This document shows positions 8,762 to 63,850 of a stretch of 64,000 nt of DNA, piece after piece (position 1 is the first letter of the stretch; each line of letters opens with the position of its first letter). The notes beneath the pieces are model-generated. The model made no database searches. It was not told the origin of the DNA and was given only the letters and a program-made list of their open reading frames with translations. Source of the stretch: Orbicella franksi (lineage: Eukaryota); assembly GCA_964199315.1 (NCBI GenBank), contig OZ116707.1, positions 12,090,001 through 12,154,000 on the forward strand. The letters run 5' to 3'. Both the position numbers and the translations under genes were made by a program.

Positions 8762-8833
8762 AAACCTGGAGGGAAACAATATTCAGAATTTAACAGAGAA
8801 TGTTTTCTCCGGTTTACCGTATTTAAATCGGCT
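8762..8833 (+). CDS. Host gene, first identified exon (LRR): NLEGNNIQNLTENVFSGLPYLNRL
   Basis: 72-bp exon, CAG acceptor at 8759-8761, GTAAGT donor at 8834, phase 2/2, canonical 24-aa LRR. Linkage to the downstream gene is inferred from strand and phase. Confidence 0.85.
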
Positions 8834-9189
8834 GTAAGTATACTGATCAATGTTTTAAATATTAATTGTTGAATTTAATTCACATAGTTCCAACTCCTAC
8901 TCCTAACTTTTTCAAACTTTCCAAAGCTTTAGTAAGGTCTCGATGCCTGTTAGGTATATGGATTGACTTCTTAAATACTAAATAATACTAAATAATACTA
9001 AATAATAATAATAGGTCAATTGCAATATCTTTAAATTCTAACTTGGCGCCAAGGCCTAGGCTTACCCCTTCCCTCCCACCTTGTACGTCCGAAGGTTAAG
9101 ACATGCATGATATGAGCACAGTGATTAAATGCCAAATGGGAATGGCTAATGCGAACCTTGTTGTTGATCTGCCTCTTTGGGACCGATCG

Positions 9190-10891
9190 GGGCAAACAAC
9201 ATGTTCACAATATGGGCAAAAACCTTGTAAACACAACAAAGAATGTCACATATGCTTTTTGGTCAACATGCCAGTATAGAACACTCCCTCATTCTACCTA
9301 TGTAATTCTCATTGTAAATTCCTAGAGTTGTCACATCAAAGTTTCTGCTCATGTCACTCTCCTCATTTCATTTGAGTAGTGAGCGATTGTGTAGAAGTCA
9401 CTTTGAGTGACAGAGATCCTCAATTCCAAATCCCTTGTCGGTCAAAACTGTGGTGTCTTTTTCCTTTATCGTGTCAAGAAAACCACTGTCTGAAGTTAAA
9501 TCACTATCCGTAACCGACCCTGGGTATGTATCAGTACACATGACCAAGCTACCATATGGTGTGATCCATATGCCAGTTTTGCCAGTGTCGTGGTTCTTTA
9601 AAGAACTAAATGTTGCACCGCTGATGTCATGATTCTCTTAGGAAGAGATTCAGTTTTCAGTCCAATCACCCAGAAGTACAGTATCCTAAAATTCCTCCAG
9701 GTAAAGGGCTGAGGTCTATTGCATCGAAAACGGTACAAAAACAAACAAACAAACAAACAAACAAGAAAAGAAAAAGAAAAAGAAAAAACCGCCCAGGCAC
9801 TAAAAATTCTGGACTGAGTAGAGTCACTTGTATTTGTCATAAACCCCATTATTCCTAGATGGAGGGTGTGTTGTATATTTTTAGATAGCACATTAGTTCT
9901 GTCCTCTTTGTTCGCTTTCTTTGTCCATTTTCATAATTAGGATAGACAAATACAGGGCAGGACACACTCAAAAAGACAGTCAAAGTCATTTAATGATAAT
10001 CCAATCATGTACAGAAATTGTTGTGGATACAATTTCAAACAAGCATAGGAGAATGCAGACTTTTGGTTGCTTTGACCAAATTGTTTCAGTTGTTTGGCAT
10101 AGGCTTCTTTCTCCGCTTTAAGTGAGCTCAATTCACGATGTAAACATTATATTTACCTGTTCTGTTTTCACTTTCAGTGTCTCTTTTAGATCCTCAATTT
10201 CCTCTCTTAACACTTTACAATCAGAGGGTTATCTTCCTTTTTATAACCCAGTCTCCTCCTTTTTACTCTCTCATTTGGCTGCCTTGTAAGAGCACGTTTG
10301 GTCGACTCCGGTTTTTGCACTTGATGTTGTTTTCTTAGTAATTTTCTTTTCAAGATAACTGTTACTACATGGCAAATCTGGAAGTTTATTTATATCCTTC
10401 CTTGTTGTAATAGTCCAGTGGGCAGAACAAACGAGATCTCGTTTGAAATGCACGCCTTTATTCAGAATTTTACTGTATGCGTGGCGTTTCTCTGGACAAT
10501 TAGCGACTTCACTGAAACGGTAGTAAGTCAACTTACTATATGCTCTCAACGAATTCGTACAAAGTGTTGCATCACAGTTTCAGTGCTCGACTCCACACGT
10601 GGTAAATTTTATAGTCGGCAGGTCTTCGATATCTGTTTTGCTTCCTGCTGCCCAGTGTTTCGTGCAAATGACATGGCCATTAAAATTAACTTCATGTTTT
10701 GCTTGGCCAAGAACATACAAATGAGCATCGACAACCTCTTTTCTTTCTGAGGCTAGTTTTGTTAACGTATAGTATTCACCACCGCTTTTCCAGGAACTCT
10801 TACAATATCTCCTTGAACACTACCACTGCCAAAAATGGAAACTCTTTACTTTCTGCGATGTACTTAATTCGTCTACCACAGCGGACGCCAT
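9190..10891 (-). pseudogene. ISL2EU/Harbinger-type (DDE_Tnp_4-like) transposase relic with two N-terminal THAP-like C2CH fingers
   Basis: ATG at 10891. Fingers CSRRYC...VICTKHW...LPTI and CDATLC...YYRF...LVCSAHW...LPDLP. Core SSLKNHDTGKTGIWITPYG...YPGSVTDSDLT...VLTDKGFGI...LGIYNENYIGRMR. Stops and frameshifts present. Confidence 0.75.
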
Positions 10892-61521: not shown

Positions 61522-62813
61522 GTAATTATTGATTCGTATATTATCTGCCAGTATAGAATGAATCATTTATTTACAATCAGCTTGTCAGCTTGGCACTAAG
61601 TGAGTTTTGTTAACCCGTGGAACAACCTCTAAAAATTATTGCTAAATAGAAAACCATGGACTAATTAAGTAGTCTAATAGTGTTTTATTGTAAAGTAGCT
61701 TGAACTGACAAAAAAATAATAATAAAAAATATATATTCACAAAATGGTAGAAAACTGACGAAGCTAGTACTCTGACCAAAATTTCAAAAGGCCAGACGAT
61801 GACATTTTGCCAAACCAGAATTCTGTCGACGTGAATGAAAAATATCTAAAACAAGAGTCTGTGTAACATTTCGAAATCATGTGAGCTACTTTTAAAGTTC
61901 AAGTAACTGAACAATTATAGTTTTGGATTACCAAAAGGAAATAGCATTGCCTAGCCTAAAATCATCTTTAACCCTATTAAGACCGGCTTTTAGTCCAAAC
62001 ATTTCTCCTTTGTTGCCAATAACATAGAAAAGTGACGCCATATTACGTGGCAATAGACTGTTTTCGATATATTAAAATTCAGCTTGGCAGTGAGGCTTAG
62101 AAGACACAAACAAAGGAAATTGAATGACATGTTTATTCATTTCTTTTGTTTGTGTCCTCTAGGCCTCACTATCAAGCTGAATTTAAATATATCGAATTGG
62201 CCTATTAGGGAAGGTTTTCGAAGGAGCCGCCATCTTGGATCAACCGATTTTTCTGGATTTTTCTAAAACGATAGTTTTTAGTTTTGGGAATTCAAAATAA
62301 ATAAGAAAGTAATTCTATAAAATTCATTTAAAAATTGACCCTAATTCCGTGAAAGCTAACTTCAAATAAAAATTACAAAATTTCAAATTTGTAAAAACAT
62401 GCCTGTAAAAATGTGGTTAAATTTATTTACATAAATAATGAAACAGCTATCACGGGCCCTTTCTGCCCCCGCCCCCAACCCCCTTCTCTTATATATCTGA
62501 ATAGGGATAAACAATGGGTTATGCAAATCCAAAGGCGTTTGAGTGAGAGTTAAATAAACTGTCGCTTAGTGTTTCATTTTTGCTTTTTTGTTTTATCATA
62601 ATTATTGGGGTTTTTTTTCTCGGTCTCCTGTATTTGCAACGGTAAAATCTACAGCAATGTCAAAACCGAAAAAGAAAATCATTGGAATATCTCCACAGCA
62701 AGGGTTGACTGGCATTTTATAATTAACTTTTACTTTCGTATGGCCAAAAGGACTACTTGCGATTTTCTTCCATGGGAAAAAAAATACTGATTTCTTTCTT
62801 ATCTTTTTCACAG

Positions 62814-63850
62814 TTCAGTATGCTGTATACCTCCATCGTTACATAAAACAATGGCGCAAAAATCGTCAATGGTCTTTTTCTTGTTGTCTTGCTTTGATCC
62901 TGCCACTTACCGAACTGCAGAGCGAAATAAGCGGATTGACTGGAACGAACATCCTGAAGCAACAGCTGCAAACTAGTGGAATCGAAATACCTTCGGTTAC
63001 GTTTGAACTCGAGGAACAAGAAACTAAGCCAACTCCAAATGCAGGGAAGCGTGGAAAAGTGGCTCGTAATCTCAGAGAGGAAAATGAAGATAACGCGATT
63101 GGTCAGGAGAGCGTGACCCTACGTGTTGATACTCGTAAGCGTAAACGGGTTACCTTTGACCTCAAAGACCAAGACATTAACCCAACTCCAAGAGGAAGAA
63201 AGCGTGACAGAGTGGCTGAAAATCCCAGGAAGAAAAATAAGGAAAACGTCATTGGTCAGGAGAGCTTGACCGTACCTGTTGATGCTCGTAAGCGCAAACG
63301 GGTTACCTTTGACTTCAAAGACCAAGACATTAACCCAACTCCAAGAGCAAGGAAGCGCGATAGAGTGGCTGAAACTCCCAGGAAGAAAAATAAGGAAAAC
63401 GTCATTGGTCAGGAGAGCTTGACTGTACTTGTTGATGTTCATGAGCCCAGCCAGGTTACCTTTGATCTCGAAGAAAAAGCAACCAACGCAACTCCAAAGG
63501 CAAGGAAGAGTGATAGAGTGGCTGAAAATCCCAGAAAGAAAGCGGACGAAAACGTGATTGGTCAGGGGAGCTTCACTGTACGTGTTGATGTTCATGAGCC
63601 AAGACGGGTTACCTTTGATCGCAAAGAACAAGCAGCTAACCCAACTTCAAATGCAGGGAAGTCCGATGAAGTGGTTGTTACTCTCAGCGAAGAAAATGAA
63701 GAATACTTGACATGCCAGGAGAGCTTGACCGTTGATGTCTATGAGGGAGGACGGATTACCCATAGCCTCACAGAACAAGAAGCTAACCCATCTCCAGAGG
63801 AAGGGCAGCCTGGCGCGGAGCCAAGGGATGTCGAGGACACTTGGCTGTAA
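62814..63850 (+). CDS. Host gene last exon: end of last TM helix and cytoplasmic tail of 51-aa repeats ending EDTWL*
   Basis: TTTTTCACAG acceptor, phase 1. VQYAVYLHRYIKQWRKNRQWSFSCCLAL joins ORF 62894-63850. TAA at 63848-63850. Confidence 0.92.
62996..63800 (+). repeat. Coding tandem repeat, 5 full plus 1 partial x 153 bp (51 aa)
   Basis: GTTAC(C/G)TTTGA (VTF[DE]) anchors at 62996, 63149, 63302, 63455 and 63608, exactly 153 bp apart. Confidence 0.95.

What the first reader, a model, noticed from the sequence alone, without database searches (positions are those of the whole stretch)
8762..63850. LRR + Cys-rich + ~9-TM receptor-like protein that does not look like a rhodopsin-type GPCR
Seen: nine exons with canonical splice sites join in frame (4099 bp, ~1365 aa, N-terminus missing). 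They give 4-5 LRR units, CxxCPxG repeats and ~9 hydrophobic helices. Positive-inside patterns (KRKSKKK, RQQKEKK, RQRK, RYIKQWRK) put the N-terminus outside and the C-terminus inside. No DRY or NPxxY motif was seen. Recalled: the LKILIGFYQV / YLxADYSIxC / FLFxxY..WYWExxEMxRK signature is typical of a poorly characterised multipass family abundant in protists, loosely similar to fungal Flc/Pkd2 TRP-like proteins. Inference: this may be an uncharacterised LRR sensing or innate-recognition receptor/channel family in early-branching animals.
Basis: partly seen in the sequence, partly recalled or inferred. Interest (0 to 1): 0.75.

Follow-up and report, generated by a model that had tools for sequence, protein, structure and literature searches.

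The report
Coral LRR receptor on Flc/Pkd2-type membrane domain
This is a real stony-coral gene for a cell-surface protein with a leucine-rich-repeat head and a cysteine-rich stalk on a nine-helix membrane domain of the yeast Flc/Pkd2 and slime-mould SadA type, not a GPCR, and it belongs to a very large animal family that nobody has studied.

Summary
I find 12 exons, not 9. All have AG/GT sites and join in frame to 1438 aa. The 5' end is still missing. The protein has 6 LRR exons, CxxCPxG repeats (Ephrin_rec_like and DUF7630), 9 TM helices, N-terminus outside, and no DRY or NPxxY motif.

An AlphaFold2 model of the ortholog's membrane domain is confident (pLDDT 86). It matches no solved structure. 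It does match predicted models of Dictyostelium DDB_G0281931, yeast Flc1-3, S. pombe Pkd2, Dictyostelium SadA and many protist "TRP C-terminal" proteins. Pfam TRP (PF06011) is the only family hit by several members (7 of 52, best E 2e-9).

The family has about 4300 representative clusters. Named members come from sponges, cnidarians and echinoderms, so it is not confined to early-branching animals. This genome holds at least 60-70 loci.

RNA-derived contigs from sister copies confirm junctions 6-7-8-9 and 10-11. Expression of this copy is not shown.

The likely role is a surface sensor or adhesion receptor that signals through a possibly Ca2+-permeable membrane module. That is inferred, not tested.

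The scan met this family before on other DNA of this genome (s1-207783, s1-198446).

The parts
8762..8833 (+). Exon 1 of the model, LRR unit 1 (72 nt, phase 2). An upstream exon is required but was not found.
   Evidence: AG/GT sites and LRR consensus. LRR_8 E 0.006.
23770..23841 (+). Exon 2, LRR unit 2 (72 nt).
   Evidence: AG/GT sites. tblastn to Oculina P0020, E 4e-5. LRR_8 E 0.017.
24841..24912 (+). Exon 3, LRR unit 3 (72 nt).
   Evidence: AG/GT sites. tblastn E 0.002.
27135..27206 (+). Exon 4, LRR unit 4 (72 nt).
   Evidence: 62% identity to the Oculina ortholog. LRR_8 E 0.003.
27660..27731 (+). Exon 5, LRR unit 5 (72 nt).
   Evidence: 55% identity to the Oculina ortholog. LRR_8 E 5e-4.
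28707..28781 (+). Exon 6, LRR unit 6 (75 nt). A 22.5-kb intron follows.
   Evidence: The equivalent exon is spliced to exon 7 in RNA-derived contig L004 of a sister copy.
51350..51424 (+). Exon 7, linker (YMMRTNLTRISL...).
   Evidence: Matches Oculina P0021 residues 171-192. 89% identity to L004 48-122.
52698..52769 (+). Exon 8, linker (DMDEGNIDKLRF...).
   Evidence: 91% identity to L004 125-194.
52877..53085 (+). Exon 9, end of the linker and first CxxCPxG repeat.
   Evidence: 60% identity to the Oculina ortholog. Ephrin_rec_like E 0.014. Contiguous with exons 6-8 in L004.
58800..58925 (+). Exon 10, Cys-rich repeats (CRQCPNG, CNPCPDG).
   Evidence: 65% identity to the Oculina ortholog. Ephrin_rec_like E 0.011. 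Spliced to exon 11 in L001.
59158..61521 (+). Exon 11: rest of the Cys-rich stalk, TM1 to most of TM9, and the acidic repeat.
   Evidence: 67% identity to the Oculina ortholog over 408 aa. Splice sites checked.
59454..59579 (+). DUF7630-like Cys-rich module just before TM1.
   Evidence: PF24633, E 7e-6, 26.5 bits against a cut-off of 27. Mapping.
59586..59666 (+). TM1, followed by KRKSKKK.
59697..59771 (+). TM2, carrying the invariant LKIxIGFYQV motif.
59892..59987 (+). TM3.
60000..60107 (+). TM4, preceded by RQQKEKK.
60123..60194 (+). Extracellular beta-loop with four conserved Cys and the ADYSIxC motif.
   Evidence: Strands E189-212 in the AF2 model. Invariant Cys and Asp. Mapping.
60204..60335 (+). 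TM5, extending into the cytoplasm (RQRK).
60312..61141 (+). Acidic tandem repeat of 54 nt (18 aa), 15 copies, inserted in the cytoplasmic TM5-TM6 loop. The loop is about 21 aa in most relatives.
   Evidence: TRF. Loop lengths. Low-pLDDT loop in the model.
61191..61247 (+). TM6, carrying the WYWExxExxRK motif.
61260..61322 (+). TM7, part of the predicted homodimer interface.
61338..61406 (+). TM8, part of the predicted homodimer interface.
61449..61521 (+). First part of TM9, up to the donor site.
62814..63850 (+). Exon 12: end of TM9 (VQYAVYLHRYIKQWRK), cytoplasmic tail and TAA stop at 63848-63850.
   Evidence: 55% identity to the Oculina ortholog, E 2e-29. Splice site. The motif across the junction is conserved in 13 RefSeq models.
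62995..63661 (+). Tail repeats of 153 nt (51 aa), 4.4 copies. Three carry K/RRVTF.
   Evidence: TRF. Regex.

Best explanation
Shown here: the window holds most of a multi-exon stony-coral gene. It encodes a type-I-like, N-terminus-outside membrane protein. The parts, in order, are six LRRs, a roughly 95-aa linker, a Cys-rich stalk (Ephrin_rec_like-type CxxCPxG repeats and DUF7630), a nine-helix membrane domain and a repeat-rich cytoplasmic tail. The membrane domain has the fold of the Flc / fungal Pkd2 / SadA group (Pfam 'TRP', PF06011; called 'TRP C-terminal domain' in protist entries). It is not a GPCR fold and not the six-helix TRP/polycystin fold. The gene is one of at least 60-70 paralogs in this genome. 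The family is found in sponges, cnidarians and echinoderms. The Cys-rich stalk and membrane module are the conserved core. The LRR head and the tail vary.

Inferred: the protein sits in the plasma membrane as a dimer, with TM7 and TM8 predicted at the interface. The variable LRR head binds an extracellular ligand or surface, microbial, algal or matrix. The rigid disulfide-rich stalk passes binding or pulling force to the membrane module. By analogy with stretch-activated, Ca2+-permeable S. pombe Pkd2 and with Flc proteins, the module lets Ca2+ through. Alternatively or in addition, it signals through its cytoplasmic loop and tail. In this subfamily the loop carries a long acidic repeat and the tail carries K/RRVTF motifs that resemble PP1-docking sites.
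For: Gene model: 12 exons, all AG/GT, in frame. Each exon from 27135 on aligns to Oculina RefSeq models with the same architecture.

The architecture signal peptide - (CUB or MAM-SRCR) - LRR - Ephrin_rec_like - DUF7630 - TM is conserved in Montipora, Nematostella, Actinia, jellyfish, Oscarella, Patiria and sea cucumbers.

RNA-derived contigs from sister copies show LRR exon 6 spliced to exons 7-9, and exon 10 spliced to exon 11. The genome holds these exons only apart from one another.

AF2 model of the ortholog's TM domain: pLDDT 86.3, pTM 0.84, nine long helices.

Fold matches: Dictyostelium Q54T82 (TM 0.64, E 5e-9); Flc1/2/3, YOR365C, S. pombe Pkd2 and SadA (TM 0.53-0.56, probability 1.0). 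Protist 'TRP C-terminal' and Ephrin_rec_like proteins match at TM 0.6-0.74 and E 1e-9 to 1e-13.

PF06011 is the only Pfam family hit by several members (7 of 52, best E 2e-9). The window's own TM6-9 hits it at E 0.006.

Family size: 4282 representative clusters at E<=1e-3 and 95 matches in the own genome.

Conservation gradient against homologs: TM 52-71% identity, Cys-rich 53-67%, LRR 38-51%, tail 21-44%.

Topology: positive-inside residues and sequon distribution.

Homodimer test: score 0.34, best of 3 controls 0.00. The mark was reached by 21 of 30 proteins solved as pairs of one chain and by 0 of 23 solved as single chains. The runs agree in at least 62% of contacts, and the partner's pLDDT is at least 63.

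Function of relatives, from papers: reconstituted Pkd2 passes Ca2+ when the membrane is stretched (PMC9727806). SadA is a 9-TM adhesion receptor needed for adhesion and phagocytosis (PMC2173991). CRMPs are Cys-rich 9-TM proteins proposed to sense host contact, and their TM cores resemble those of Dictyostelium homologs (PMC9670195, PMC9815656).
Against: No function was tested. Channel activity in this fold rests on one reconstitution study of a distant fungal relative, and no structure of the fold has been solved.

The window protein's own PF06011 score (15.9 bits) and DUF7630 score (26.5 bits) are below the Pfam cut-offs.

The 5' end, with start codon and signal peptide, was not found in the window or in 50 kb upstream. 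This copy may therefore be truncated.

Expression of this particular copy is not shown. L001 and L004 fit sister copies better. Poly(A) RNA reads gave nothing on LRR exons 2-6, and metatranscriptome contigs there were unspliced.

The modelled protein is the 67%-identical Oculina ortholog, not the window protein.

The dimer test was calibrated mainly on microbes, and the chains were folded without an alignment.
Confidence: 0.55

Rival explanations
1. The classification is the same, but the membrane module does not conduct ions. The protein is an adhesion or contact receptor like SadA or the CRMPs. Its nine helices serve for dimerisation, trafficking and recruitment of partners, and it signals through the cytoplasmic loop and tail.
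For: SadA is defined genetically as an adhesion and phagocytosis receptor (PMC2173991). CRMPA and CRMPB act in a complex with MIC15 and TSP1, and their TM domains are predicted to pair (PMC9815656). A homodimer through TM7 and TM8 is predicted here: score 0.34, best of 3 controls 0.00; the mark was reached by 21 of 30 proteins solved as pairs of one chain and by 0 of 23 solved as single chains; the runs agree in at least 62% of contacts and the partner's pLDDT is at least 63. The tail and loop are long, repetitive and variable, as expected for docking regions.
Against: The TM module is the most conserved part of the protein and has invariant polar or charged residues inside or next to the helices (K56, Q63, E290, R296). 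That is more than a mere anchor needs. The fungal relative passes Ca2+ in vitro (PMC9727806).
Confidence: 0.3
2. The membrane domain is a divergent GPCR, Frizzled- or adhesion-GPCR-like, and signals through G proteins.
For: The Oculina ortholog gives one Pfam Frizzled hit at the threshold (22.5 bits against a cut-off of 22.3, E 7.5e-5). PANTHER calls TgCRMPa GPCR-like (PMC9670195).
Against: Only 1 of 52 family members hits Frizzled. The domain has nine helices, not seven. There is no DRY or NPxxY motif. No GPCR appears among meaningful fold matches: Foldseek PDB best E 0.013 at TM 0.12, and the GPCR rows score TM 0.11-0.14. VIA-align found only helical-hairpin matches.
Confidence: 0.03
3. This copy is a 5'-truncated or silent member of the family (a pseudogene in the making), or exon 1 and some other LRR exons belong to another transcript.
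For: No start codon, signal peptide or LRRNT exon was found in the window or in 50 kb upstream. No poly(A) reads lay on LRR exons 2-6. The RNA-derived contigs fit sister copies better. Retroelements lie in the introns.
Against: All 12 exons are open and have intact splice sites over 55 kb. The retroelement in intron 9 is shared with a transcribed sister copy. The Oculina RefSeq models of the ortholog also lack an annotated signal peptide, so the first exon may simply be short and hard to detect. Read depth was very low, with only 12% of each run read.
Confidence: 0.12
4. The protein is an intracellular carrier like yeast Flc proteins (FAD or haem transport in the ER), not a surface receptor.
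For: The membrane domain shares its fold with Flc1-3.
Against: The large LRR and Cys-rich ectodomain carries many N-glycosylation sequons. Full-length relatives have a signal peptide and an LRRNT cap. The variable head and the family expansion fit recognition rather than housekeeping transport.
Confidence: 0.04

Closest known systems
Dictyostelium discoideum putative leucine-rich repeat-containing protein DDB_G0281931 (UniProt Q54T82)
   Same: It is the best Swiss-Prot fold match of the TM domain: TM 0.64, E 5e-9, aligned to residues 677-1066 of 1211. By its name it also has LRRs. RefSeq names some coral paralogs after it.
   Different: Only 15% identity in the aligned region. It is uncharacterised, and no paper on it was found. 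It is amoebozoan, not animal. I did not inspect its ectodomain.
Fungal Flc1-3 / YOR365C and S. pombe Pkd2 ('TRP-like', Pfam PF06011)
   Same: Same predicted nine-helix fold with the N-terminus outside (TM 0.53-0.56, probability 1.0). PF06011 is hit by 7 of 52 family members, best E 2e-9. Pkd2 is Ca2+-permeable under membrane stretch (PMC9727806).
   Different: 9-13% identity. The fungal proteins have a different, smaller ectodomain without LRRs or CxxCPxG repeats. The window protein's own PF06011 score is below the cut-off. Despite the name, no canonical TRP or polycystin structure matched.
Dictyostelium SadA (substrate-adhesion molecule, Q8I7T3)
   Same: A Cys-rich (EGF-like) ectodomain on a 9-TM domain of the same predicted fold (TM 0.56, E 1.7e-4). 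It is a surface adhesion and phagocytosis receptor (PMC2173991).
   Different: No LRRs, 11% identity, a single gene rather than a large expanded family.
Apicomplexan and ciliate cysteine repeat modular proteins (CRMPs)
   Same: A Cys-rich, Ephrin-receptor-like or EGF-like ectodomain plus a 9-TM core with the N-terminus outside. The CRMP TM cores are predicted to pair and to resemble Dictyostelium homologs (PMC9815656). CRMPs are proposed contact sensors (PMC9670195). RefSeq names one Oculina paralog 'cysteine repeat modular protein A-like'.
   Different: I could not run a direct sequence or structure comparison, because no CRMP sequence was reachable with the tools. CRMPs are much longer, have Kringle, MAR or lectin heads instead of LRRs, and act in rhoptry or mucocyst exocytosis.
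LRR pattern-recognition receptors of animals (Toll-like receptors)
   Same: An extracellular LRR head with a signal peptide and LRRNT cap in full-length relatives. The family is large and lineage-specifically expanded in cnidarians and echinoderms.
   Different: TLRs have one TM helix and a TIR domain. Here the LRRs sit on a nine-helix module and there is no TIR domain.

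Membership tests
Flc / fungal Pkd2 / SadA membrane-domain superfamily (Pfam TRP, PF06011) | Significant match to the PF06011 profile | tested here: inconclusive
   The window's TM6-9 scores E 0.006 and 15.9 bits against a cut-off of 28.5. Among 52 family TM domains, 7 hit PF06011, best E 2e-9, and no other family is hit by more than 3.
Flc / fungal Pkd2 / SadA membrane-domain superfamily (Pfam TRP, PF06011) | Same fold of the membrane domain as Flc1-3, Pkd2 and SadA | tested here: met
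   The AF2 model of the 67%-identical ortholog (pLDDT 86.3) matches the AlphaFold models of Flc1/2/3, YOR365C, Pkd2 and SadA over about 390-420 residues, with TM 0.53-0.56 and probability 1.0. Both sides of the comparison are predictions.
Flc / fungal Pkd2 / SadA membrane-domain superfamily (Pfam TRP, PF06011) | About nine TM helices, N-terminus outside, C-terminus inside | tested here: met
   Nine long helices in the model. Hydropathy peaks. Positive-inside clusters and sequon distribution. Signal peptides in full-length relatives.
Flc / fungal Pkd2 / SadA membrane-domain superfamily (Pfam TRP, PF06011) | Ca2+ permeability or stretch activation | not testable with these tools
   Known only for S. 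pombe Pkd2 in vitro (PMC9727806).
Animal LRR - Ephrin_rec_like - DUF7630 - 9TM family (uncharacterised; RefSeq 'uncharacterized protein') | TM domain matches the family profile | tested here: met
   The window's exon 11 hits 620 proteins, the best at E 2e-200. The window locus is recovered by profile A1 in the own genome at E 1e-124 and 3e-60.
Animal LRR - Ephrin_rec_like - DUF7630 - 9TM family (uncharacterised; RefSeq 'uncharacterized protein') | LRR head, CxxCPxG / Ephrin_rec_like repeats and DUF7630 upstream of TM1 in one protein | tested here: met
   Six LRR exons. Ephrin_rec_like E 0.011-0.014 on single exons. DUF7630 E 7e-6. In-frame joining. The same order is found in orthologs with significant Pfam hits. 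Junctions 6-9 and 10-11 are seen in RNA of sister copies.
Animal LRR - Ephrin_rec_like - DUF7630 - 9TM family (uncharacterised; RefSeq 'uncharacterized protein') | N-terminal signal peptide (and LRRNT cap) | tested here: not met
   Present in full-length relatives. Not found for this gene in the window or in 50 kb upstream. The model is 5'-incomplete.
G-protein-coupled receptors (rhodopsin, Frizzled, adhesion classes) | Seven-helix core with a fold match to solved GPCRs | tested here: not met
   There are nine helices. Foldseek against the PDB gives a best E of 0.013 at TM 0.12, and the GPCR rows score TM 0.11-0.14. VIA-align against 48,161 chains gives only partial helical matches.
G-protein-coupled receptors (rhodopsin, Frizzled, adhesion classes) | Class motifs (DRY, NPxxY) or a family profile hit | tested here: not met
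   No [DE]R[YFW] or NPxxY motif. Frizzled is hit by 1 of 52 members only, at the threshold.
Canonical TRP / polycystin channels (six-helix, tetrameric) | Six-TM voltage-gated-like fold with a pore loop | tested here: not met
   No TRP or polycystin structure appears among the Foldseek or VIA-align matches. One of 52 members gives a stray Ion_trans hit.
Cysteine repeat modular proteins (CRMP) | Conserved core of EGF-like / Ephrin-receptor-like repeats plus a 9-TM domain, homologous in sequence or fold | not tested
   The architecture is the same, and RefSeq names paralog P0116 'CRMP A-like'. PMC9815656 reports Dictyostelium homologs with a similar predicted TM core. No CRMP sequence or model was reachable for a direct comparison.

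The most novel reading that the evidence does not exclude
These proteins form a so far unrecognised class of animal pattern-recognition or contact receptors. A diversified LRR head directly gates a dimeric Flc/Pkd2-type Ca2+-permeable membrane module. Recognition of microbes, algal symbionts or prey would then be converted into a Ca2+ signal without adaptor proteins. This would be an animal counterpart of the CRMP contact sensors of apicomplexans. It was inherited from the unicellular ancestor, expanded in corals and echinoderms, and apparently lost in some animal lineages (loss was not tested here).
Probability: 0.15. Interest if true: 0.85.

Novelty: new variant of a known kind. Interest (0 to 1): 0.55.

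Why it matters
Corals, anemones, jellyfish, sponges and echinoderms carry dozens of these genes per genome, at least 60-70 loci here. Yet they are annotated only as 'uncharacterized' or misnamed after their LRRs, for example 'LRR-containing protein 15', 'carboxypeptidase N subunit 2' and 'IGFBP acid labile subunit'.

The family links a classic recognition head to a membrane module with no solved structure. The few studied relatives of that module act in Ca2+ influx under membrane stretch (Pkd2), cell-substrate adhesion and phagocytosis (SadA) and host-contact sensing (CRMPs).

If the module is a gated channel, this would be a new receptor-channel logic in animal innate recognition, symbiont uptake or mechanosensation. 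It would also give an experimentally tractable animal entry point to the Flc/Pkd2/CRMP fold.

For genome annotation, it shows that these LRR proteins should not be counted as secreted or single-pass LRR proteins, nor as GPCRs.

Tried and rejected
- Laying RNA reads on 23700-28850, which covers LRR exons 2-6. The two raw poly(A) runs gave 5 and 0 reads, none on exons. The metatranscriptome contigs covered introns and exons alike and were unspliced. There were no joints at the predicted sites. The result is uninformative, neither support nor refutation. It also means the RNA-run holdings of exon 11 do not prove transcription.
- Sequence search of PDB chains with the TM profile: only noise.
- Foldseek against the PDB and VIA-align against 48,161 chains: no whole-domain match, only helical hairpins with Z of at most 9.4.
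- Pfam Frizzled hit of the ortholog: rejected. It is seen in 1 of 52 members, sits at the threshold, and has no fold support.
- Weak DUF2921, Lamp2, MAM1 and Bac_rhodopsin hits: rejected as noise.
- An LRR-like open segment at 48157-48228: rejected as an exon. It has no GT donor in phase, and its match to the ortholog is at chance level (E 22).
- ORF 7863-8090 as a possible first exon: the match to Oculina isoform X2 is insignificant (E 29), and I saw no GT donor after the matching codons (CRRL) in the frame translations.
- Search for 5' exons (LRRNT, CUB, further LRRs) in the window and in 50 kb upstream: nothing. That stretch holds transposon-like ORFs.
- A direct CRMP comparison was not possible.
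- Literature searches for DUF7630, DDB_G0281931 and LRR plus nine-TM proteins in cnidarians or echinoderms: no paper on the animal family.

Full report
**What is in the window**

The window is AT-rich eukaryotic DNA with no N. Its largest + strand ORF (59352-61532) hits more than 600 proteins of stony corals. The named hits come from Oculina patagonica and Montipora.

I laid the closest full-length models, Oculina P0020 and P0021 (67% identical over the searched part of exon 11), on the window by tblastn. I then read the boundaries by eye. This gives 12 exons on the + strand:
- 8762-8833, 23770-23841, 24841-24912, 27135-27206 and 27660-27731: five 72-nt LRR exons, all in phase 2
- 28707-28781 (75 nt, sixth LRR)
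- 51350-51424 and 52698-52769
- 52877-53085 and 58800-58925
- 59158-61521
- 62814-63850

Every exon has an AG acceptor and a GT donor. The exons join in frame to 4318 nt and 1438 aa, ending at TAA 63848-63850. A pattern scan for 66-78-nt LRR exons found exactly these six on the + strand and no others in the gene.

Its count of 9 exons and about 1365 aa is three small exons short. Because all small exons are 72 or 75 nt in the same phase, that does not break the frame.

The first exon starts inside a codon, so at least one upstream exon must exist. I could not find it in the window or in 50 kb upstream. That stretch contains transposon-like ORFs.

**Anatomy of the protein**

Residue numbers refer to the 1438-aa model.
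- Residues 1-145: six LRRs.
- Residues 146-240: a linker with no Pfam match.
- Residues 241-447: Cys-rich repeats CLECPAG, CRQCPNG, CNPCPDG and CAVCSPG. Single exons give weak Ephrin_rec_like hits. DUF7630 scores E 7e-6 just before the first helix.
- After that: nine helices.

KRKSKKK follows TM1, RQQKEKK precedes TM4, RQRK follows TM5 and RYIKQWRK follows TM9. Twelve of 13 N-x-S/T sequons lie in the ectodomain or in the TM4-TM5 loop. Full-length relatives start with a signal peptide followed by an LRRNT-like Cys cap, a CUB domain, or MAM and SRCR domains. There is no DRY or NPxxY motif.

Two lineage-specific additions are cytoplasmic:
- A 54-nt (18-aa) acidic repeat in 15 copies (60312-61141) sits in the TM5-TM6 loop. 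That loop is about 21 aa in most relatives.
- The tail has 4.4 copies of a 153-nt (51-aa) repeat. Three copies carry K/RRVTF.

Eight loci in the genome share the loop insertion, seven on contig C10 between 10.3 and 13.1 Mb and one on C503. Its length varies from about 360 to 910 nt.

**Are the LRR exons part of the same gene?**

Three lines of evidence say yes.
- The order LRR - Ephrin_rec_like - DUF7630 - TM recurs in RefSeq and other models. These come from corals, sea anemones, jellyfish, a homoscleromorph sponge, a sea star and sea cucumbers.
- Homology to the Oculina ortholog runs without a break across the exon 6/7, 7/8 and 8/9 joins.
- JGI contig L004 carries exon 6 (3' part), 7, 8 and 9 contiguously and then runs into intron 9, including the same retroelement. 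JGI contig L001 carries exon 10 joined to exon 11 and then a retained intron 11.

In the genome these pieces occur only apart, exon by exon, with 17-22 kb between exons 6 and 7. The contigs are therefore RNA-derived.

They fit sister copies better than the window copy. L001 is 99-100% identical to contig C503 and 95-99% to the window. L004 is 92-99% identical to C503 and 89-93% to the window. The junctions are therefore shown for the subfamily, not for this copy.

My one read-laying run, on LRR exons 2-6, was uninformative. There were almost no poly(A) reads, and the metatranscriptome contigs were unspliced and covered the introns too. For the same reason, the RNA-run holdings of exon 11 do not prove transcription of this locus.

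**What the membrane domain is**

A profile of 13 coral TM domains (A1, 418 positions) found 4282 representative clusters at E<=1e-3 and 214 at E<=1e-30. It found nothing in the PDB by sequence.

I modelled the Oculina ortholog's TM domain with a 52-sequence alignment, with identities to it down to 22%. The model is confident, with pLDDT 86.3 and pTM 0.84. It shows nine long helices, short helices after TM2 and a three-stranded Cys-rich extracellular loop between TM4 and TM5.

No solved structure matches the domain as a whole. Foldseek's best E is 0.013 at TM 0.12. VIA-align finds only helical hairpins with Z of at most 9.4. No GPCR and no canonical TRP or polycystin channel appears among meaningful matches.

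Predicted structures do match.
- In Swiss-Prot the best is Dictyostelium DDB_G0281931 (TM 0.64, E 5e-9). It is followed by yeast Flc1, Flc2, Flc3 and YOR365C, S. pombe Pkd2, Dictyostelium SadA and Cryptococcus Flc1. The seven best after it score TM 0.53-0.56 with probability 1.0.
- In the AlphaFold cluster library the next matches after a coral protein are entries whose accessions I take to be protist (the table gives no organism). They score TM 0.6-0.74 and E 1e-9 to 1e-13. Their heads vary by name: Ephrin_rec_like, beta-helix, TIR, IPT/TIG, laminin-EGF and Sushi. Several are named 'TRP C-terminal domain-containing protein'.
- The language-model atlas gives the same picture for Haptophyta, Ciliophora, Chlorophyta, Porifera and Cnidaria.

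At sequence level, PF06011 (TRP) is the only Pfam family hit by several of the 52 TM domains (7 members, best E 2e-9). The Frizzled hit belongs to one member only and sits at the threshold. The window's own TM6-9 hits PF06011 at E 0.006.

The GPCR reading is rejected.

**Family and evolution**

Named members come from Scleractinia, Actiniaria, Scyphozoa, Porifera (Oscarella) and Echinodermata (Patiria, Holothuria, Apostichopus). The family is therefore old in animals and not confined to early-branching ones.

This 497-Mb genome gives 95 exon-level matches. That is at least 60-70 loci, and most have open frames of 500-600 aa.

Identity of the window protein to 15 homologs falls from the TM module (52-71%) and Cys-rich stalk (53-67%) to the LRRs (38-51%), linker (18-53%) and tail (21-44%). 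This is a conserved core with a variable head and a variable tail.

**How it most likely works**

The architecture, topology, fold class, family size and conservation gradient are shown. The rest is inferred from relatives.
- S. pombe Pkd2 is plasma-membrane-localised and passes Ca2+ when the membrane is stretched (PMC9727806).
- SadA is a nine-TM adhesion and phagocytosis receptor with EGF-like repeats outside (PMC2173991).
- CRMPs are Cys-rich nine-TM proteins with the N-terminus outside. They are proposed to sense host contact and trigger exocytosis. Their TM cores are predicted to pair and to resemble Dictyostelium homologs (PMC9670195, PMC9815656).

A homodimer test of the ortholog's TM domain passed. 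The score was 0.34 and the best of 3 controls was 0.00. The mark was reached by 21 of 30 proteins solved as pairs of one chain and by 0 of 23 solved as single chains. The runs agree in at least 62% of contacts, and the partner's pLDDT is at least 63. The interface lies on TM7 and TM8. The model supports pairing but does not show it.

My best reading is a dimeric surface sensor. Its LRR head binds a ligand or surface, and its stalk transmits binding or force to a possibly Ca2+-permeable module. The acidic loop and the RVxF-like tail serve as docking sites.

The main rival is the same receptor without ion conduction, like SadA or the CRMPs. A 5'-truncated or silent copy cannot be excluded for this locus.

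**Novelty**

The proteins are in databases but unnamed or misnamed. I found no paper on the animal family.

The kind is known: a Flc/Pkd2/SadA/CRMP-type nine-TM module with a Cys-rich ectodomain. The LRR-headed, strongly expanded animal branch is an unstudied variant.

Two earlier follow-ups of this scan, on other DNA of this genome, reached the same classification for CUB-Ig-LRR and beta-helix-headed paralogs. My result was obtained before I read them and agrees with them.

Noticed in passing
window 53658-57814, minus strand (intron 9): Remnant of an LTR-retrotransposon pol. Reverse transcriptase (56052-56456), RNase H (55567-55929) and the integrase zinc-binding domain (54892-55449) lie in separate short ORFs, so the element is broken. 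The same insertion is present at 93% identity in the transcribed sister copy L004, so it predates the duplication.
   Followed up: partly
window 32138-38183, minus strand (intron 6): A GC-richer block (0.43-0.47 against about 0.38) with several minus-strand ORFs of 130-267 aa that have no Pfam match. It is probably another mobile element.
   Followed up: partly
window 16700-18100 and 22851-23342 (intron 1): Two repeat blocks. One is a run of + strand ORFs sharing a '...GLETKLQ...RAAR' peptide, with strong GC skew (0.20). The other is a minus-strand ORF made of REINSPTIHLRS-type repeats.
   Followed up: no
G000 contig C503:17006-44257 (minus strand): A copy of this gene on a separate contig with the same exon order. 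It is 99-100% identical to RNA contig L001, which is only 95-99% identical to the window. It may be a very recent paralog or an alternative haplotype of a C10 copy.
   Followed up: partly
L001:2500-3469 against window 61522-62608: The RNA-derived contig retains intron 11. Read through, the frame stops at TGA 61530-61532, which would cut the protein inside TM9. The contig also lacks window 62062-62167 (106 nt). This is probably pre-mRNA rather than an isoform.
   Followed up: no
G000 C10:10.34-13.08 Mb and C503: Eight loci share the insertion in the TM5-TM6 loop. The gap between the two halves of the TM match ranges from about 360 to 910 nt, so the acidic repeat varies in copy number between paralogs.
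   Followed up: partly
window 63119-63631, minus strand: A 170-aa ORF lies antisense to the tail repeats. It is itself repetitive and is most likely a by-product of the repeat, not a gene.
   Followed up: no
P0221, P0220, P0248 (Holothuria) and A0A2B4RD19: Family members are named after their LRRs only: 'IGFBP complex acid labile subunit', 'Carboxypeptidase N subunit 2' and 'LRR-containing protein 15'. These names hide the nine-helix domain.
   Followed up: yes
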